NCBI GenBank assembly: GCA_033442325.1
Contig: JAWQFM010000010.1
Coordinates: 1,065,727 to 1,129,726, forward strand
DNA length: 64,000 bases
Reading direction: 5' to 3'
Source of the DNA: Salpingoeca rosetta
Lineage: Eukaryota; Protista; Choanoflagellata
This document shows positions 47,235 to 64,000 of this stretch, piece after piece; within the stretch, counting starts at the first letter, position 1, and each line of letters starts with the position of its first letter. The notes below the pieces were generated by a model. It saw only the letters and a list, made by a program, of their open reading frames with translations, had not been told where the DNA came from and searched no databases. The translations under genes were made by a program, and so were the position numbers.

Positions 47235-48168
47235 TGTGCCCGCGTTACACCTCGCCCCGCTGCCAGTGGCCACTGCACTCTTCACCCCTTCTTCGTTGCC
47301 CTTGTGCTCCCTTGTTGTGTGCTTTGCTTTTTTCGTCTGCTTGTATCGTTCCAGCATGTTTGAACTATTGCACACACATGCATACACATTCTTCCTGCCT
47401 GATGCTTGTTTCCTGGAGTGAGTGAGTGCTGTTGGTGGTGTCTTTCTTCGATGATGTAATTGTGTCCGCATTAAGTCGGTGTTTGTTCTCTTTTGCTGCT
47501 GGTGTTGTCGTAATGGCTGTTTGCGTTTGTTGTGATCATATAGAGATGAGGCAAATGATTGATGAACACGGCTGGTGAATGGCGAATGGCAAATGGGCGA
47601 GCGCTTGCCCGCTGTTGGCACGCTGCGTTTTTGTGTGCTTCCCTATCACAAACTGTGGTTCTCTCTGTGTACAGGAGCGAACAAGCAAGAAGCAAACGGC
47701 AAGAGGATGCATGCGGCTTGCTTCAGGTAGCATCAACACGTGACAAGCATGAGCAGCAAAAAAAAAAAAGAAAAAGAAACAAGGACACAGACAACAGAAG
47801 CAACTTCGCATGTGCATAACACAAGATGCGGAGGCAGACAAAGGGAGCAAGTCAGCAACAAGTCATCAGGTGAAACAACGGGGATGCCAGACGACAGCAC
47901 GACAACATGGAAGAGCAGCAAAAACCAGTGAACAACGAGGAGGCGATTTCAAGTACAACTGCAACGCGGGGAATCACTCAAGTGTATAATCTAGCGACAG
48001 TCACAACAAGTACAACCACACACACACACACACACAGACACACAGACACACAGACAGACAGACACACACACACACACATAAAACTTGGGTTGTACAAAGT
48101 AGGATGAAGCATGGGTTCAAGCAGCTAAACGAATGATAGTGAACAACAGGGTCCGCCAATGGAAAACA

Positions 48169-48895
48169 TCACTTGTGTGGGGTGGAACGCGCACTGTCGC
48201 TTGCTCGACTCGCTCGCGCTTTGCGAAGACGATTGCGTGGTGAGCGCTGGGGAACCTGTGGATGACGTGTGCATGCATACGTGAACGTGAATGTGCGTGC
48301 GCGCGCGCGTGAGGATATGTGTGTGGTGGTGATACACGCCGTGTGTGTGTGTGTGTTGTCACAAATGTGGGTGATGAGACATATGGTGACGAACAAGGCT
48401 GATGACACACACTTCAAAGAGGCAACAGGTTCTGTAGTTAGAAACACCCACCGCAACCAACAACAAGGTACAGCCAACAACAGATGCGCTCGCAATCCCA
48501 GGCCATCACCCCCACCTTGGTGCGCGTGCTGCAGAGGCCTGGGCCGCCAGTGGACTTGAGAATGTCCTGCACAGTCGCCTGGGCCTGTTCACCGTAGTCC
48601 TTCCTGGCGTTGGAGCGTTCCGCATGCTTCACAAGATACTCCTCAAGGTCCATCCAGCCGCCACCAACGCGCACCATCACCTTGTCCCGCAGCACACGCA
48701 TCAGCAGCAGCCGCTTCTCGTTGCCAAGCTGATACTTGCCCTTGGACACGCTGCATTGGGGAGGGGAAGAGGAGTGTGAGCCATGATACATGTGCTACAG
48801 CAGAAGGAGCGACGGACACACACCCAGAAACACACAGGGGAATTCACGCATGCACACACACACACACACACACACACAAGAATTCACGCATGCAC

Positions 48896-48926
<31 letters not shown>

Positions 48927-51900
48927 CACACACACACACACGTACCGCTTCAGCTTTGATTTCATTTGCGGAACAAAGTTGAGGACCTCTGCCACGCGTT
49001 CGTCGACATCATCGCCCTGAACATGTGTGTACGATCCAGACTCCTGCATGGCGGGGAGTGGTGTGAGACGACAAGAGGGGAAGGCGATGGTGAGCAGCAG
49101 TGTGCAAGCAAAAAGGGCACAACACACACGCACACACACACACACAGGTACGCACACGTGCACGAATACACACACATACGCGCGCACACACACACACATG
49201 CACACACATATACACAAACACACACACCACACGCACACAAGCACACGCGCACAAACACACACGCAAGCAACAACGTACGCTTGGGAGGCGGATTGGCTCT
49301 GCTGTTGCGCGGTGGTCTTCGACCTCGTGCGGAAGCGGCAGACCACGAACGCGATACGCAACATCCATGATGCCCGTGACAACTTGGCGATGGTCCTCAT
49401 CGTGCACCAGATCCTCCTCCTCAAACACGGACGGGTATTTGATGCCAAGGCACTGCGCCCACTCGATAAATGCGCGGATGTTGCTGAGGGCAGCCTCGTT
49501 CCCTGGCTCGGCTTCCTCCAGGTACTGCACCTCAAGCAAATCGCGTTCACGGATGAACGACGTGATGTCCTGGCACTCGCGTGTAATGACGACCTCGTCG
49601 CTTGGGCCCTGCTCCGCTTCAAGCTCTCGCAGCTTCTCCTCCACCTCATCAACGATGTTGGCCAGCTGGCACAGCAGCTTCCCGTCGCGCAGCTCGTCAA
49701 TCAGCGTGTCTGCCGTCAGATCCGTCTCCAGCAGCAGGTTCACCCACTCCGCCACGCTCTCAAACAGCTTGCGCTCCTTGCTCGTAGTCGCTGCCTCGCC
49801 GTGGTGTGCACCGCCATCGTGACCATCACCGCCACGCGCCCGCTCGTCCAGCTGTGCGCGCAGCTCATCCACAAGCGACTGCAAGTCCTGCAAGCGGCGC
49901 TGGTCAGCTGCCCGCTGGTCAGACAGCTCCTTGATTTTGCTGCTGTGCTCCAGCCGCAACGCCATAATCTGGTCGGCCGCCGCGTCCTCCGCCGACCGGC
50001 GCGATGAGTTGAGCTCGCGGTCCAGCCGCGCAATCTCCAGCTGCGCGTCTGCGTGTGCGCGCAGCAGCATCTCCTCGCGTGCTGCGCTGCCGCTGTCGGC
50101 ACCAAAGGCCTCCCCAGCCTCTTGCTCTTTCGCCTCCTCCTCCTCCCGCAGGCGTCGCAGTGCGCGCTCCGCAGCAGAGTGGAACGCAATCTCCGCCTGC
50201 TGCAACCGCCCCTGCGCCTGCTGCTGCCGCACGCGTGCGTCCTCCACAGCCTGGCGCGTGCCGGGAGTCTGGTGCTCTGCGTCTTCCTTTCGCGCTGCCT
50301 CCAGCTGGCCCTCTGCTTCCTCCAGCTCCATGCGCGCCTGTAGCCGCCGCTTGTTTGCTGCTCGCGCCTCTTCGTCCTGCACACAGATGAGATCCACGTC
50401 CTCCGGGCGCAGGTTCGACAGCGACATCTCCCTGAACCGCCGCAGCAGCGACGCATTTGCAACCGCGCGATCACGGGCCTCCGTCTCCGCCTCAGACACG
50501 CGCCGCTGCAGGTCCTCCACCTTGAGGCGGTGCGCGCTCGTCTTGGTGTCGAGCTCGGCCTCAAGCTCCTCCTTGCGCGCCTGCAGTGCAGCCATCTTCT
50601 GCGACAGCATGTCCCGCTCCAGGCGTGCTGAGCTCTCCTTACGCTCGGCCTCCATGCACCGCAGCCGCAGCAGCTTCACCTCGTTGTCGTAGCGCTCCTT
50701 GCGCGAGGCCGCCAGCGTCTCCACGCTCTCCAACTTGCGCTGCGCGTCCTCAAGCTTGCTTGCCGTCTCCTCCTCCACCTGCGCGCGTGTGGTTGCGGCG
50801 GCCGTGCGAGCCTCCTCCAGCTGCTCACGCAAGCGGGCCACCTCCGTGTCGTAGTGGCTGCGCTCGGTCTCCAGCGTGGACCGCAGGTGCGTTTCCGCCG
50901 TCTCCAGCTTCTCTTGCGCTGCGTGCTCCTGATCCAGCAGCTGCTGCTCCAAGTCCCGCACGCGCGCTTCCAGGCTCGACTTGGTCTGCTCGGCCTGCTC
51001 CGCGCCCTCCCGCTGCTGCAACTCCAACAAGTCGAGTTTGCTCCTGGCGCTCTGCAGGTCGTGTTGCGCCGCTGCCAGCTGCTCCTCCACCTCCTGGGTC
51101 TCCTTCTGCGCAGCGAGCACGCGCTTCCTCTCCTCCTCACCGGCAGCCTTTGCCTCCTCCAGCTCTGCCGCCAGCGCCCCGGCCCGCTTGTCCGCGTCGT
51201 CAGCGAGCGCAGCGCGCAGCTTGGCCAGCTCCTCCTCGTGTGCTGCTTTGCTCGTCTCCAGCTCCTGGTCTCGCGCTTCCACAGTGGCGGCGGCGGTGGC
51301 CTTGGCCAGCTCGGCCTCGCGTGCCCGCTCCTCTGCCTCGGCGAGTTTGCCTGCAAGCACCTCGCCAGCCTCGCGCTGCTTGCGAGCCTCCTCTGTCGCT
51401 TCCTCCGCCTGCGTGCGCGCCGCTGCGAGTGCGCCGCGCTGTTCCTTCAGCTCGCGCTCGCGGTCGGCCAGCGCAGCCTGCAGCGTCTCTGCCTGCGTGT
51501 TTGCCTGGGCCACCTTCGCCTCAAGCTGCTGCTTCTCCTGTGTGAGCGCGTCCACCTGGGCGCCCATGTCCCGCCTGTCGTTTTCTGCGGCAGTCACGGC
51601 TTCCGAGAGCTTGTTTGCCTCTGCGTCCCTTGTCTCCAGCTGCGCGTTGACGGCTGCCAGGGCGTCCTCGTGCTTCGCCTGCGCAGCTGCCATCGCTGCG
51701 GCTGCTTCTTCCTTGGCCTTTGCTACCTCCTCCTTGCGTGTGCGTTCTGCTTCGTCGCGGGCAGTGGCAAGGGCCTGTGCATGGTCGGCCTGTGCTTGCT
51801 GCAGCTGCTGTGCAGCCTCCTCCTTGACGCGGGCGAGTTCTTGCGCATGCCGCTGCTTCAAGGCCTCCAGCTGCTCGCGAAGCTCTTGCAATTCGTCCTC

Positions 51901-54278
51901 GAGCGACTGCTTGGCCGCGCGCTCTGCGTTGAGCTCCTGCCGGACTGTATCGCCCCCAGCAGCATGCTCCTCTGCTTGCTTCTTCGCTGTCTCCGCCTCC
52001 TTCTCAGCAGCAGAGAGCGCCTGGCTGAGGCGATCGCGCTCAGCGCGGTGCTCGCTCAACACCCGCTGCTGTTCGTCCTGCTGCTCATGCAGGTGTGCCT
52101 CCAGCACGCTCTTCTCTTTCTCGTGTTTGGCGTTTTGCTCTTCCAAGAGGGCGTCTGTGCTTGCCTGCATCTCCGCACGCGCGGCTGCGACCGCCTCCTC
52201 CATTTGCTTCCGCAGCTGTGCCAGCTCCTCCTCCAGATCACCCACCTCCTTCTCGTGCTCTTGCTCCAGCTCCTGCGTGTACGCGTCTGCGCTCGCTGTG
52301 GCCTCCTTCAGCTTCGCCTCGTACACGTCGCGCACTTTCTGCACCTCGTCCTGATGGGCATCTGCCGCTTGCTGTTGTGTGTGTGTGTTGTTTGTTGTGG
52401 TTGTGCAAGATTGGGGTGGGTGAGAAAATGGCGCGGTTTGCGCGCACACACAAACAGACAAGCGATCAAATATGCTTTATCCACACACATGTACGCATAC
52501 GCACATACGCACGCACGCACAGACACACGCGCACAAACACAGAGACAGAGACAGACACACGCGCACAAACAGTCACGCAGTTTCTTTTTGCACCTGAGCG
52601 AGGGCAAGCTGCTCGCGAAGACTGTCCATCTCCTTCTCCAGCTCCTTCATGCGTTTGGTGGCGGCCGTGCCAGCCTGCGCCACCCGCGAGTTGAGTTCGC
52701 GTTCGTGGCGCTCAGAGAGATGCTTCACCTCCAGCCGCAGCCGTTCCATCTCGCCCTTGAAGTAATCTGATGCCTGCACTGCATCCGACATGTCTGACAC
52801 CTTCTTCTTCAGGTCGTTGTTCATGTCTCGCAGCGTGTGCAGTTCGCGTTGGAGCGAGGCCTGATCGCCCTGGCTAGCTGCCGCCTCCTGCAGCTCAGCC
52901 TCAAGTTCGCTCGTTCGCGCCTTCTCTTCGTCGTACATCTTCTGCAGTTTCGTTCGCTCGTCCACCAGGGCCTTGACCTCTGTCGTGGTGCGTGCCAATG
53001 CCTCCTCCAGCTCAGCCAGGCGCTTGCGCAGTGCATTCAGGTCGTTGGCATCCTCGCTCAGCTCCTCAATCGAGTTGTGCTTGGACAACCGGCGCATGGG
53101 CGTGGGGGCATCGGATACAGACCCCTGTCTGCTGTGTCGCCGCGCAAGCGCCGCCGCAATGCTCAGTTCACGCTCCTTGTCCTCCACCACGTCCATCACC
53201 TGGCTGTTTCTGCGACGAACACGCGATGTCGGGGTTGGGTCGTACACGTACAACACGTGCTCCAGCGTATCCCACGTGTTTGGCAGGCGAACCATGACGT
53301 GGCGGCGCAGCTTGGCCACCTTGAAGGGGCCAATGTGCCCAAACCTGTACTCGCCAGGCCCAACGCGCTGCGGTACCAGGTACTCCTTCTTCGTCTTCTT
53401 CAGGATCATGGCGATGTCGTGCTCAAGCCCAAGCTCTTCCTCTGCCAGGTTGTGTGTGTGTGAGTGTGTGTGTGAGTGTGTGTGAGTGAGCGTGTGCATG
53501 TTGTGAGTGAGCGTGTGTGTGTGTGCATGTGTGTGTGTGCATGTGTGTGTGCATATGTGTATGTGAGTACGTTCGTATGCGAGCAACTGGACTAGGCATG
53601 TTCCGTACCGTCGGTGAGCTTGAAGTTGCTTCCCATCCTGTCAATGTTCCGTTCAATCTCAACAAGCTGAATTGTGTGCATGTCCGTGCACGAGGACATG
53701 AGGAAATGGGCATGCTGTACATATCTGTGTACGTATGTGTGCATCATGTGTGTACATGTGCATGTGTGTGCATGCGCGCGCGTGTGTGTGCTTTTCTGCG
53801 TTTGCGTGTGTGTGTGTGCATTTGTGCGCTGCTCACCATGGGCGGGGCGACGGCTTTCTGAATTCGCGCCAACTCCATCAGACTGTGGTGTTTGTGTTGG
53901 TTTGTGGAGAGAGGAAGGGGCATGAATGAGGCATGTTCGTTGCGACATGTAAGATGTGTCTGGTATCGCGATACTGAACACCACCACTGTCACTCCTCAC
54001 AACACACACACGCACACACACACCTGTAGAGGACGTTTTTGTCGTTCTTGTGGTCGACGAGATCGGATGCTTCAAAGAGGACAGAGTCCGCAACGCCAAC
54101 ACCCTTGAGCCATTCAATGAACCGGCACACGTTGTCGCGTGCTTGAAACGACCCTGGTGGTGGTGATGATGATGATGGTGGTGGTGATTGTGACAGGTGT
54201 TGGCTACAGTGGATGCGAGTCGAAGGCAAAGGAAGAGAGAAGAGAAAGGGCTGCACGAGGAGCAGAGATACAGTCATA

Positions 54279-54339
<61 letters not shown>

Positions 54340-55844
54340 CAGGCAGACACACACGCACAGAGGCAGGCAGGCAGACACGCACACATACACACAGAGGCAG
54401 GCAGACACGCACACACACACAGCACACACACATACACACACACACACACTGGCGTACCAGACGCAGCGCGGCGCATGTATGTTGTTGGCGCTGGTGTGTA
54501 GGATGGCTTCCCCATGTTATCGCGAACAACGCTGCTGTTGACGATGGAGGAGCCTTCTTTTTCTCCCTTTTCAATCAGCCCCGCCAACTGACACAGCACC
54601 GTGCCGTTGTCTGCACAGCACGGACACAGGTGCAATGTGAGCGCGCTAGTGTGGCTTTGCATTGTTTTAAGCGTTGGAAGTGGGAGGGTGTGTGTTTGTG
54701 TGTGCGTGCACTTGTGTGTGCGTGCACTTGTGTGTGCGTGCACTTGCGTGTGTGTGTGTGTGTGCGTGTAATCACGCAGGCGACATGCAAGTCTCGAGCA
54801 ACAGGCAGTGCTCTGCGCTTGTGTGCATACCAAGGTCCGTCATGATTGTGTCAGAGGTAATGTTCATGTGGAACAGCCCTGAAGAATACCATTGTCACAG
54901 GCAGACAGCTTATGGAATGAGAAGGGGCTTGTGGAAGCGCGCGCGCACACACTCATGTGCAAGTGCGATTGTGCATAGGGTTCGTTTCCAACACAAACAC
55001 ACGCACACACGCGCGCGCGTGCACACACAAACACAGACGGACATTGCAGCGCACCTGCGAGCCACTCGGCAAGGTCTTCACGGTATGCTGCAAGGCGTTC
55101 CTGCTGCAGCGTGTCGCGCTGCTGCTCCGGCAGGTAGCTGCTGGCAAGACACGGCACAGGTTGGTGAATGACACACAAGCAGGGGGAAGGAAATACAGCC
55201 GTGCAGTTGTCGCAAGAGGCGCAAGCATGTCACCAAAGATACAACAACGTACGTGTCCGCCATAGAAAGACGCTTGGGGCCTGTACAACGGTGTATATGT
55301 GCATGCGTGTGTGTGAGAGAGAGAGTGTGTGTGCGTGTGTGCGTGTGTGTATGTGTGTGTGTGTGTCAGTGTGTCAGGGTGCAGAACAGTGTGTGTGTGT
55401 GTGTGCTCGACGTGGGAATGTGTGTGTGTGTGTGCGTAGCACACAGCATGTACACAAGAATTGCTCGTTTACACGCAAGGGCAAGCGCGCTGCGAACTCA
55501 CGCAGTCGAACGCTGCTGCCATCGTCAGCGGAGAACGCAGCTCCGTCACCGTCGTTGTCTGTTATGCATGCGCGAGTGGCACATCAAGAAGATGTGAGTC
55601 CACAGACAGACAGACAGGCAGTCAGACACACAGACAGGCAGTCAGACACACACACACACAATCACAACACCGAAACCAACAAGCACCAAACAGGGCATGA
55701 ACAACGAACAAGTACCAAGGTGTCACGCATGCATCACATCACGTTGCACACGAGTGTCACATGAGACAACAACAGCAACCAACCACAGCAACCAACCACA
55801 CCAACCAACAACCACACCATTCCAAGCCAGCACCTACCGGTCAT
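48169..55844 (-). CDS. Double-headed GAS2-like protein: CH-GAR, ~1000-aa coiled coil, second CH-GAR
   Basis: CH1 [54 protein letters not shown]; GAR1 [30 protein letters not shown]; E/A/K/Q heptad exons (~53100-49850); CH2 [35 protein letters not shown]; GAR2 [34 protein letters not shown]. The first (7-nt) and last exons are less certain; an unspliced end at 48438 is also possible. Confidence 0.85.
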
Positions 55845-56219
55845 GGTGACTGTGAATCCTTCCTTTGGCCAAGTCTCTCACTGTTCACGCGTGTGCACTT
55901 CCTTCCCCCTCTTGTTAACGACAGCCTAGGTCCACAGCACGGGCAAAGCCGTGCACGTCCGGGCAGGTGAGCACAACAAACACACAAGTGCACAGGCAAA
56001 CACACAGGCAACACGAGACAAGCAAGCAAGCAAGCAAGGTTGGTGTTGTGTGTTGTGTTGTGCCCACCAACAACAATGCTGCCTCTTCTTCGTCTTTCGC
56101 GGCCCGCGCTTCTTTGAATTTTTTTTGGTTTCGCCCATTTATTGTTGTCAGACGTGTTTTGCACAAGCAAGCACGATTCCAAAGAGGAAGAGGAAGGTTT
56201 CGCGCCAAACAAACACACG

Positions 56220-56274
<55 letters not shown>

Positions 56275-56344
56275 CACACACACACACACACACACACATA
56301 CACACACACACACGCGCGCGCGCGCAGATGCAGATGCAGATGCC

Positions 56345-64000
<7,656 letters not shown>

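What the first reader, a model, noticed from the sequence alone, without database searches (positions are those of the whole stretch)
48169..55844. Bipolar CH-GAR...CH-GAR protein: a possible long-range actin-microtubule spacer
Seen in sequence: two complete GAS2-type CH+GAR modules (~55140-53235 and ~49770-48615) in one spliced frame, separated by roughly 1000 residues of heptad-rich sequence. Established: animal GAS2/GAS2L proteins have one CH-GAR pair, and spectraplakins put the actin-binding domain at one end and GAR at the other. I know of no described family with both activities at both ends of a coiled-coil rod. Inference: at ~0.15 nm per residue the rod could reach ~140 nm and cross-link actin and microtubules at each end, for example between collar microvillar rootlets and basal-body microtubules in a choanoflagellate.
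Basis: partly seen in the sequence, partly recalled or inferred. Interest (0 to 1): 0.75.

Follow-up and report, generated by a model that had tools for sequence, protein, structure and literature searches.

The report
Two-headed GAS2-like choanoflagellate cytolinker
This is a real, already annotated but unstudied Salpingoeca rosetta gene for a long coiled-coil protein with a CH+GAR (actin/microtubule-binding) module at each end; it is conserved in other choanoflagellates, and its residues suggest one end holds actin and the other microtubules.

Summary
The stretch is the annotated Salpingoeca rosetta gene PTSG_04078 ("hypothetical protein", 1656 aa). It lies on the minus strand, CDS 55844-48169, with 14 exons and 13 GT-AG introns. 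It encodes CH-GAR, a heptad rod of about 1,060 residues, then CH-GAR. All four domains score.

Eleven proteins share this layout. Nine are named choanoflagellate records: eight species, with two paralogues in S. rosetta. One is an unnamed transcriptome ORF and one an environmental contig. Most are complete transcriptome ORFs, so a two-gene artefact is very unlikely. No other protein with two GARs appeared in the listed best 150 of 464 hits among 1.84 billion representatives, and no paper describes the layout.

The symmetric reading, with both activities at both ends, is only partly supported. Compared with the mouse GAS2 cryo-EM and mutagenesis work:
- CH1 keeps the actin-pocket aromatic residue (11/11); CH2 has lost it (0/11).
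- GAR2 keeps the tubulin-contact arginine and Gly-hairpin (11/11); GAR1 has lost both (0/11).

A rod fragment is modelled as a parallel, in-register dimer. My best reading is a polar linker of up to about 150 nm, actin at the N end and microtubules at the C end: spectraplakin logic built from GAS2 parts. The degenerate domains probably act as regulators.

This is a new variant of a known kind. The scan noted the same stretch once before, in an overlapping window, and not on other DNA.

The parts
48169..55844 (-). Whole CDS of PTSG_04078 (1656 aa). The 14 exons are 55844-55838, 55558-55502, 55280-55253, 55137-55055, 54878-54831, 54610-54458, 54153-54024, 53882-53837, 53666-53609, 53441-52594, 52371-49279, 49043-48946, 48750-48516 and 48255-48169 (the last includes the stop codon).
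   Evidence: 100% identity to P0001. The exon map has a unique GT..AG solution at all 13 junctions and translates to exactly P0001.
53643..55118 (-). CH1 (residues 38-192, split over exons 4-9). This is the animal-like GAS2-type CH domain. It keeps the G-S-F-x-A-R-D-N motif at 54458-54131.
   Evidence: Pfam CH on P0001, best stretch 50-176. Animal GAS2L CH domains match CH1 at E 1e-18 to 1e-32, against 1e-3 to 1e-7 for CH2. The aromatic residue at the GAS2 F108 position is present in CH1 of 11/11 members.
53197..53633 (-). GAR1 (residues 196-285). A divergent GAR in which the Gly-hairpin is replaced (M-V-R-L-P-N-T-W at 53295-53272) and the R242-equivalent is Ala.
   Evidence: Pfam GAS2 31.7 bits, cut-off 21.3. 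PDB matches to MACF1 GAR 5ve9/5x57 at E 0.002 and to GAS2 1v5r. Residue tables.
53083..53214 (-). Cluster of three R-R-x-S motifs (residues 280, 304, 320) directly after GAR1. These are candidate basophilic-kinase sites.
   Evidence: Motif scan: a cluster of two or three R-R-x-S motifs just after GAR1 in 6 of 7 group-A members, and a single R-R-K-S there in the seventh, the environmental contig. The alignment shows the conserved R-R-R-N-S.
49792..53196 (-). Linker plus coiled-coil rod (residues 286-1346). It is crossed by intron 52593-52372, which joins the two halves of the protein.
   Evidence: Proline-poor, with a heptad lag signature. Mean identity to orthologues is 24%, yet inter-module length is 916-1151 aa in 10 of 11 members. 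Orthologues align without a gap across the exon junction in 5 of 6.
51130..51912 (-). Rod fragment (residues 640-900) modelled as a homodimer.
   Evidence: score 0.40, best of 3 controls 0.00. The mark was reached by 21 of 30 proteins solved as pairs of one chain and 0 of 23 solved as single chains (on eukaryotes 17 of 29 and 0 of 30). Runs agree in at least 94% of contacts and partner pLDDT is at least 84. Lowest-error contacts are residue i with residue i, which means parallel and in register.
50305..50454 (-). Conserved island inside the rod (about residues 1126-1175). It holds 1 of the rod's 4 prolines (P1142; P1189 lies just beyond it) and interrupts the heptads.
   Evidence: Sliding identity rises to 0.33-0.39 here and to 0.39-0.47 at about 1026-1075, against about 0.2 elsewhere in the rod. 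Proline positions.
49303..49791 (-). CH2 (residues 1347-1509, inside exon 11). A GAS2-type CH3 domain with an acidic insertion; the actin-pocket aromatic residue is replaced (P-G-N-E-A-A-L-S-N at 49506-49480).
   Evidence: Pfam CH 31.5 bits, cut-off 26. The best solved match is the GAS2 CH3 domain 9kbx_A, E 1.1e-8. Aromatic at the F108 position in 0/11 members. Mean identity to orthologues is 54%.
48576..49040 (-). GAR2 (residues 1519-1608, exons 12-13). A canonical microtubule-contact surface (M-V-R-V-G-G-G-W at 48677-48654; L-L-M-R-V-L-R at 48707-48687).
   Evidence: Pfam GAS2 63.2 bits on the core exon. PDB match to MACF1 GAR at E 1e-10. R242, R252, GGG and W257 equivalents are kept in 11/11 members.
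48172..48575 (-). Basic Ser/Thr/Pro-rich tail (residues 1609-1656) carrying the conserved motif [12 protein letters not shown] (48545-48250, across the last intron).
   Evidence: The motif is conserved in six of the seven group-A members, with looser forms in the seventh and in group B. T-K-L-P fits the S/T-x-I/L-P EB-binding signal in 3 of 7; S. rosetta has T-K-V-P (motif definition from PMC4058111).

Best explanation
PTSG_04078 encodes a long, GAS2-derived cytoskeletal cross-linker.

Shown:
- It is one gene, with CH-GAR at the N terminus, a heptad-patterned rod of about 1,000 residues, and CH-GAR plus a basic tail at the C terminus.
- The layout is conserved in craspedid choanoflagellates in two paralogous groups.

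Inferred, with the step marked:
- The rod forms a parallel, in-register homodimer (model only). The two N modules would then sit at one end and the two C modules at the other, up to about 150 nm apart.
- The ends are not equivalent (residue comparison only). CH1 keeps the actin-contact residues of GAS2 and GAR2 keeps its tubulin-contact residues. GAR1 and CH2 have lost theirs but are still strongly conserved.
- The most likely working mode is therefore polar: F-actin is held at the N end by CH1. Microtubules are held at the C end by GAR2, helped by the basic tail and perhaps by EB proteins through the T-K-[L/V/M]-P motif. This is the logic of a spectraplakin, built from a coiled coil instead of spectrin repeats.
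- GAR1 and CH2 most likely serve as intramodule partners that gate their active neighbour, as the CH and GAR domains of GAS2L1 inhibit each other. The R-R-x-S cluster behind GAR1 is a candidate phospho-switch.

The cellular site, for example collar actin against the basal-body microtubule array, is a guess.
For: Gene and domains:
- The window's exons translate exactly to P0001.
- P0001 has two CH and two GAS2 stretches, and the single exons score by reference.

Family:
- Eleven proteins of 1469-1702 aa all have CH-GAR...CH-GAR.
- Members come from Hartaetosiga balthica and H. gracilis, Choanoeca flexa and C. perplexa, Salpingoeca infusionum, Mylnosiga fluctuans, Barroeca monosierra and S. rosetta (x2), plus one unnamed transcriptome ORF and one environmental contig.
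- N modules, C modules and the single (presumably animal) modules each form one side of a branch (SH-aLRT 98, 99, 96). The N and C subtrees mirror each other.

Rod:
- Heptad lag signature in four members.
- 24% identity but conserved length.
- Dimer model score 0.40 against a best control of 0.00. The mark was reached by 21 of 30 solved one-chain pairs and 0 of 23 solved single chains. Runs agree in at least 94% of contacts, pLDDT is at least 84, and contacts are i-to-i.

Polarity:
- In mouse GAS2, the mutations F108D, E133R, R144E and Y22D lower F-actin binding. R242E, R252E, W257E, G255A/E and K266E lower microtubule binding (PMC12084551).
- The F108-equivalent is aromatic in CH1 11/11 and CH2 0/11. 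E133 is kept in CH1 11/11.
- The R242-equivalent and the GGG hairpin are kept in GAR2 11/11 and GAR1 0/11.
- The degenerate domains are not decaying: CH2 is 54% and GAR1 48% identical across orthologues, against 24% for the rod.

Tail: a conserved MtLS-like motif.
Against: - No experiment exists on any family member.
- Binding competence is read from a handful of positions transferred from mouse GAS2 over a large evolutionary distance. R252 and W257 are still present in GAR1, so weak or altered microtubule binding is possible. CH2 keeps an R144-equivalent and, in S. rosetta, E133.
- All 22 GAR domains of the family lack the C-x-C...D-P-C zinc ligands said to be pivotal for the fold in animals. 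Even GAR2 may therefore behave differently.
- The dimer result is a model score; coiled coils are easy passes, and the hairpin alternative was not tested.
- In S. rosetta itself the tail motif has Val where the EB signal needs Ile or Leu.
- The tree is unrooted, so the order of events is unknown.
Confidence: 0.5

Rival explanations
1. Symmetric bipolar spacer. Each end binds both F-actin and microtubules, so the protein bridges two mixed actin-microtubule assemblies about 140-150 nm apart.
For: All four domains pass Pfam and all four are under purifying selection at 46-59% identity. GAR1 keeps R252 (10/11) and W257 (11/11), the two positions whose mutation weakened GAS2 binding most. Rod length is conserved.
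Against: GAR1 lacks the Gly-hairpin and R242 in 11/11 members. CH2 lacks the F108 aromatic in 11/11, and E133 is variable. Single mutations at these positions cut GAS2 binding several-fold to tens-fold. The losses are reciprocal and family-wide, which suggests division of labour.
Confidence: 0.2
2. A structural or scaffold coiled-coil protein, for example a basal-body or rootlet-associated fibre. Its CH-GAR modules would mainly mediate protein-protein or self-assembly contacts, not direct filament cross-linking.
For: All family GARs lack the zinc ligands. A conserved non-heptad island lies inside the rod, which could be a partner site. Animal GAS2L1 and GAS2L2 act at centrioles and basal bodies (PMC7199859; PMC9556235).
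Against: CH1 and GAR2 keep exactly the filament-contact residues, which is hard to explain without filament binding. Other GARs without zinc ligands also keep the G-G-G-W core.
Confidence: 0.15
3. Folded-back or antiparallel arrangement. The rod forms an intramolecular hairpin or an antiparallel dimer, so N and C modules sit together and CH1 and GAR2 act side by side like one GAS2 module on a long stalk.
For: The active CH is in one module and the active GAR in the other. A heptad break with prolines lies in the rod.
Against: The break at about 1130-1190 is far from the rod's midpoint at about 815, so hairpin arms would be unequal. The dimer model is parallel and in register over about 230 residues, with score 0.40 against a best control of 0.00 (counts as). 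The model could not test a hairpin.
Confidence: 0.1
4. Gene-model artefact: two neighbouring genes (CH-GAR-short coil, and coil-CH-GAR) wrongly fused across 52593-52372.
For: If the intron is not removed, the frame stops six codons into it (TGA at 52575-52573). That would give a 492-aa single-module product resembling animal GAS2-like proteins. No S. rosetta transcript data were available here.
Against: Ten other proteins carry both modules, eight of them transcriptome ORFs marked complete. The N and C module trees are congruent. The intron is GT..AG, phase 0, and as TG-rich as the other introns. Orthologues align without a gap across the junction in 5 of 6. No in-frame ATG occurs until about 60 codons into exon 11, inside the coiled coil.
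Confidence: 0.03

Closest known systems
Animal GAS2 family (GAS2, GAS2L1, GAS2L2, GAS2L3; Drosophila Pigs)
   Same: - A single type-3 CH domain is followed directly by a GAR domain.
- CH1 and GAR2 keep the actin- and tubulin-contact residues defined for mouse GAS2.
- CH2's best solved match is the GAS2 CH3 domain.
- There is a basic tail with an MtLS-like motif.
- GAS2 works as a dimer carrying two CH and two GAR domains.
   Different: - Two CH-GAR modules per chain instead of one, separated by a ~1,000-residue coiled coil.
- One domain of each module has lost its binding residues.
- No C-x-C...D-P-C zinc ligands in either GAR.
- Dimerisation is predicted through the rod rather than a short C-terminal tail. 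The spacing would be ~150 nm, against 12-22 nm between GAS2-bundled microtubules.
- In the tree the family's modules form clades apart from the sampled single modules.
Spectraplakins (MACF1/ACF7, dystonin, Shot, VAB-10)
   Same: - Overall logic: actin binding at the N terminus, a long rod, then GAR plus a basic tail with an EB-type motif at the C terminus.
- GAR2 matches the MACF1 GAR structures at E 1e-10.
   Different: - A single CH3-type CH domain rather than a tandem CH1-CH2 actin-binding domain.
- The rod is a heptad coiled coil, not plakin plus spectrin repeats (Pfam Spectrin only 14.7 bits against a cut-off of 29.9).
- No EF-hands before the GAR.
- An extra degenerate GAR and CH.
- No zinc ligands.
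Single-module CH...GAR proteins of other protists (e.g. Helgoeca nana P0020; unnamed environmental P0019, P0021)
   Same: GAS2-type CH and a GAR that lacks the zinc ligands but keeps the G-G-G-W core.
   Different: One CH and one GAR, separated by about 450-500 residues. There is no second module.

Membership tests
GAS2 family (GAS2/GAS2-like) | GAS2-type (type 3) calponin-homology domain | tested here: met
   Pfam CH 62.3 bits in 2 stretches on P0001. CH1 matches animal GAS2L CH domains at E 1e-18 to 1e-32. CH2's best PDB hit is the GAS2 CH3 domain 9kbx, E 1.1e-8.
GAS2 family (GAS2/GAS2-like) | GAR (PF02187) domain immediately C-terminal to the CH domain | tested here: met
   GAS2 94.5 bits in 2 stretches. 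Each GAR starts within about 10 residues of the end of its CH domain.
GAS2 family (GAS2/GAS2-like) | One CH-GAR module per polypeptide, followed by a tail | tested here: not met
   Two modules, separated by about 1,060 residues, in all 11 family members.
GAS2 family (GAS2/GAS2-like) | Zinc-binding ligands of the GAR fold (C-x-C ... D-P-C) | tested here: not met
   Absent from all 22 GARs of the family. Present in the 7 GAS2L-like rows of the alignment (4 of them named animal records), and in 108 of 119 other GARs sampled. The role of the zinc site is taken from PMC12084551.
GAS2 family (GAS2/GAS2-like) | Tubulin-contact residues of the GAR (R242, R252, G254-256, W257 of mouse GAS2) | tested here: inconclusive
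   Met in GAR2 (11/11). Not met in GAR1, where R242 is kept in 0/11 and the GGG hairpin in 0/11, while R252 is kept in 10/11 and W257 in 11/11.
GAS2 family (GAS2/GAS2-like) | Actin-contact residues of the CH3 domain (F108, E133 of mouse GAS2) | tested here: inconclusive
   Met in CH1: aromatic residue 11/11 and E 11/11. Not met in CH2: aromatic residue 0/11, and E in about 4 of 11.
GAS2 family (GAS2/GAS2-like) | Direct binding to F-actin and microtubules | not testable with these tools
   This needs co-sedimentation or imaging. Only residue-level inference was possible here.
Spectraplakins | Tandem CH1-CH2 actin-binding domain at the N terminus | tested here: not met
   There is a single CH domain before GAR1.
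Spectraplakins | Plakin domain and spectrin-repeat rod, with EF-hands before the GAR | tested here: not met
   No Pfam plakin, spectrin or EF-hand hit reaches its cut-off; Spectrin scores 14.7 bits against 29.9. The rod shows a heptad signature.
Spectraplakins | C-terminal GAR followed by a basic region with an S-x-I-P signal | tested here: inconclusive
   GAR2 plus a basic tail is present. The motif is T-K-V-P in S. rosetta and T-K-L-P in 3 of 7 orthologues.

The most novel reading that the evidence does not exclude
The family is a choanoflagellate-specific molecular ruler. It would be a parallel coiled-coil dimer of about 150 nm that sets a fixed distance between an actin structure (collar microvillar bases) and the microtubules radiating from the flagellar basal body. 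All four domain types would be active in some form. GAR1 and CH2 would have acquired new partners or act as phospho-regulated gates. It would then be an independent, coiled-coil-based invention of the spectraplakin principle in the closest relatives of animals.
Probability: 0.2. Interest if true: 0.7.

Novelty: new variant of a known kind. Interest (0 to 1): 0.5.

Why it matters
Choanoflagellates are the sister group of animals, and their collar-and-flagellum apparatus depends on coordinated actin and microtubule arrays. This family shows that GAS2-type modules were used there to build a long-range linker with spectraplakin-like polarity from quite different parts.

The reciprocal loss of binding residues gives a natural separation-of-function pair. 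CH1 and GAR2 look active, while GAR1 and CH2 look inactive yet are conserved. That pair could show what CH-GAR contacts do beyond filament binding, such as autoinhibition.

The zinc-free GARs also test whether the zinc site, which is mutated in human MACF1 lissencephaly, is needed for the fold or for microtubule binding.

S. rosetta is genetically tractable, so all of this can be tested.

Tried and rejected
- tblastn of P0001 on the window found only 3 of the exons. I replaced it with exact-match mapping and a GT..AG junction search.
I replaced them with local phmmer/hmmsearch using domains cut from P0001.
- Lane et al. 2017 (ACF7 GAR structure) is not held. The zinc-site statements therefore rest on PMC12084551's account of it, and on my memory of the MACF1 Cys/Asp variants for which residues are the ligands.
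- The supplement of PMC9145010 holds no S. rosetta identifiers. I could not tell whether its Figure 4A draws this protein.
- Rooting the module tree failed. The candidate outgroup proteins are unnamed environmental sequences. Whether the N/C duplication predates the animal-choanoflagellate split is left open.
- Spectrin-repeat reading of the rod: rejected (14.7 bits against a cut-off of 29.9).
- Two-gene reading: rejected (see rivals).
- A strict S-x-I-P motif is not conserved across the family.
- Structure prediction of the modules was not run. The modules are spliced, the database protein exceeds the 1,200-aa limit, and a model would not show whether a zinc-free GAR folds.
Searches used single exons by reference or the database record P0001. 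A local script concatenated the exons only to check that they translate to P0001.

Full report
**What is there.** The window is Salpingoeca rosetta DNA. The longest minus-strand ORF of the region (49012-52461) is 100% identical over its coding part to NCBI's "hypothetical protein PTSG_04078", 1656 aa (P0001). Exact-match mapping and a junction search place the CDS at 55844-48169 on the minus strand. It has 14 exons and 13 introns. Each junction has a single GT..AG solution, and the translation is identical to P0001. I sent no joined exon sequence to any search: searches used single exons by reference or the database record. Only a local script concatenated the exons, to check identity with P0001.

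**Do the domains score?**
- On single exons by reference: GAR1 31.7 bits and the GAR2 core 63.2 bits (cut-off 21.3); CH2 31.5 bits (cut-off 26).
- CH1 is cut by five introns, so its best single exon reaches only 14.7 bits.
- On P0001: Pfam reports CH at 62.3 bits in two stretches and GAS2 at 94.5 bits in two stretches.
- Against solved structures: GAR1 and GAR2 hit the MACF1 and GAS2 GAR domains (E 0.002 and 1e-10). CH2's best hit is the GAS2 CH3 domain 9kbx (E 1.1e-8).

**One gene or two?** The halves are joined across intron 52593-52372 (222 nt, GT..AG, phase 0). If it were left unspliced, the frame would stop six codons into the intron. Independent evidence for one protein comes from relatives:
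- A word search with the N module found ten further proteins of 1469-1702 aa, and every one carries CH-GAR...CH-GAR.
- They come from Hartaetosiga balthica, H. gracilis, Choanoeca flexa, C. perplexa, Salpingoeca infusionum, Mylnosiga fluctuans and Barroeca monosierra. There is also a second S. rosetta gene (PTSG_06248, on another scaffold), one unnamed transcriptome ORF and one environmental contig.
- Eight are transcriptome ORFs marked complete.
- Five of the six orthologues align without a gap across the S. rosetta exon junction.

I put the two-gene artefact at about 3%.

**History of the two modules.** I built a tree of 22 family modules plus 27 single CH-GAR modules, of which five are named animal proteins and the rest unnamed. 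N modules, C modules and single modules each fall on one side of a branch (SH-aLRT 98, 99, 96). The N and C subtrees repeat the same species groupings. The double layout therefore predates both the split into the two paralogous groups and the divergence of these craspedid species. The tree is unrooted, and I found no named outgroup, so whether the duplication is older than the animal-choanoflagellate split stays open.

**Is the layout found elsewhere?** I ran a phmmer search with the GAR2 core against 1.84 billion representative proteins. It gave 464 hits at E <= 0.001. Among the 150 best, only family members show two full GAR stretches; the one other two-stretch row is a 116-aa fragment with a single GAR. 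A protein with two canonical GARs would rank in that list, because domain scores add. A local HMM scan of all 167 proteins collected gave 11 with two GARs (10 CH-GAR-CH-GAR, plus PTSG_06248, whose CH2 is split by an insertion), 59 CH-GAR, 1 CH-CH-GAR and 96 GAR-only fragments or other layouts. All 11 two-GAR proteins belong to this family. A word search with the C module added no new members. Helgoeca nana (an acanthoecid) has only a single CH...GAR protein in these data. Literature searches found no paper on PTSG_04078 or on a protein with two GAS2-type GARs. PMC9145010 notes CH-GAS2 proteins in choanoflagellates, fungi and amoebozoans but likens them to human G2L1/2.

**The rod.**
- Between GAR1 and CH2 lie 1,061 residues in S. 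rosetta and 916-1151 in ten of eleven members.
- The rod is 76% E/K/R/Q/A/L/D and has four prolines.
- Hydrophobic residues recur at lags 3, 4, 7, 11 and 14 (z up to 5.8) and are depleted at other lags, in four members tested.
- Mean identity to orthologues is 24% in the rod, against 46-59% in the four domains. Length is conserved far better than sequence.
- Two copies of residues 640-900 were modelled as a complex with score 0.40 and best of three controls 0.00. The mark was reached by 21 of 30 proteins solved as pairs of one chain and 0 of 23 solved as single chains (on eukaryotes 17 of 29 and 0 of 30). Runs agree in at least 94% of contacts and partner pLDDT is at least 84.
- The lowest-error contacts pair residue i with residue i, with a 3-4 spacing over about 230 residues. 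That is a parallel, in-register coiled coil.

The model supports a dimer but does not show one. At 0.15 nm per residue the rod could span up to about 150 nm. It would be shorter if the conserved, proline-containing, non-heptad island at about 1126-1190 is a hinge.

**The ends are not equivalent.** The cryo-EM and mutagenesis study of mouse GAS2 (PMC12084551) defines the contacts:
- For F-actin: F108/F109 insert into a hydrophobic pocket, with E133 and R144 as electrostatic contacts. F108D, E133R and R144E lower affinity.
- For microtubules: R242, R252, the G254-G256 hairpin, W257 and K266. Mutations raise Kd from 0.69 uM to 2.7-47 uM.

In alignments of all family domains:
- The F108 position is F or Y in CH1 of 11/11 members and in 7/7 GAS2L-like CH domains. 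In CH2 it is E, K, P, A or T in 11/11.
- E133 is kept in CH1 11/11 and in CH2 only about 4/11.
- The R242-equivalent and the GGG hairpin are intact in GAR2 11/11 and absent in GAR1 11/11. GAR1 still has R252 (10/11) and W257 (11/11).

Each module thus keeps one competent-looking domain (CH1 at the N end, GAR2 at the C end) and one degenerate but well-conserved partner. The C-terminal tail is basic and carries a conserved G-L-[C/H]-[S/T]-T-R motif followed, in six of the seven group-A members, by T-K-[L/V/M]-P. T-K-L-P fits the S/T-x-I/L-P EB-binding signal of GAS2L and spectraplakin tails (PMC4058111). S. rosetta itself has T-K-V-P.

**Mechanism proposed (inferred).** A parallel dimer holds F-actin through CH1 at one end. 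At the other end it holds microtubules through GAR2 plus the tail. The rod acts as a spacer. GAR1 and CH2 probably act as intramodule regulators. [quoted passage not shown] Here a cluster of R-R-x-S motifs sits directly behind GAR1: two or three in six of the seven group-A members and one in the seventh. Animal relatives work at centrioles and basal bodies (GAS2L1; GAS2L2, PMC9556235).

**A further difference from animal GARs.** All 22 GARs of the family lack the C-x-C...D-P-C ligands of the zinc site. PMC12084551, citing Lane et al. 2017, describes that site as pivotal for the fold. Of 119 other GARs sampled with both flanks present, 108 have both motifs. The exceptions include Helgoeca nana, Codosiga hollandica and unnamed environmental proteins.

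**Verdict.**
- The gene is public but unstudied.
- It is best filed as a new variant of the GAS2-like cytolinker kind that works like a spectraplakin. It is a member of neither family by their defining layouts.
- Interest is moderate (0.5). It is a neat, testable case for cytoskeletal evolution and CH-GAR regulation in a tractable organism, not a new principle.
- The same stretch was noted once before by this scan in an overlapping window, and not on other DNA.

Noticed in passing
window 48576-49040 and 53197-53633; P0002-P0011, P0019-P0022, P0099: All 22 GAR domains of the choanoflagellate family lack the C-x-C...D-P-C zinc ligands, as do several other non-animal or unnamed GARs (Helgoeca nana, Codosiga hollandica, environmental). 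Of 119 other GARs sampled, 108 have them. The zinc site may be an animal-lineage feature or may have been lost in choanoflagellates.
   Followed up: partly
window 53083-53214 (residues 280-323): Two or three R-R-x-S motifs sit directly behind GAR1 in six of the seven group-A orthologues (one in the seventh), including a conserved R-R-R-N-S. A coral GAS2-like protein (P0012) has R-R-N-S at the same place. These are candidate basophilic-kinase sites.
   Followed up: partly
window 50305-50454 and about 50605-50754 (residues ~1126-1175 and ~1026-1075): Two islands inside the poorly conserved rod reach 0.33-0.47 mean identity. The downstream one is non-heptad and holds one of the rod's four prolines (P1142; P1189 lies just beyond it). 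They may be a hinge or a partner-binding site.
   Followed up: no
window 52372-52593: If this intron is retained, the frame stops six codons into it (TGA at 52575-52573). That predicts a 492-aa CH-GAR-short-coil product resembling animal single-module GAS2-like proteins. It is a possible isoform, with no transcript evidence here.
   Followed up: no
other S. rosetta scaffold (P0010 = PTSG_06248): S. rosetta has a second gene with the same CH-GAR...CH-GAR layout (1587 aa). It belongs to a second paralogous group with Barroeca monosierra and Mylnosiga fluctuans. Its CH2 is split by an insertion of about 75 residues.
   Followed up: partly
window 48017-56313 (introns and flanks of the gene): Most introns of the gene are filled with degenerate (CA)n/(TG)n microsatellite-like tracts, for example 49118-49262, 53451-53568, 54280-54449 and 56209-56313.
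   Followed up: no
window 55967-58459 (+): The divergently oriented neighbouring ORF (831 aa in one frame) carries a HIRAN domain (27.1 bits, cut-off 24.7). The two genes share an intergenic region of a few hundred bases.
   Followed up: partly
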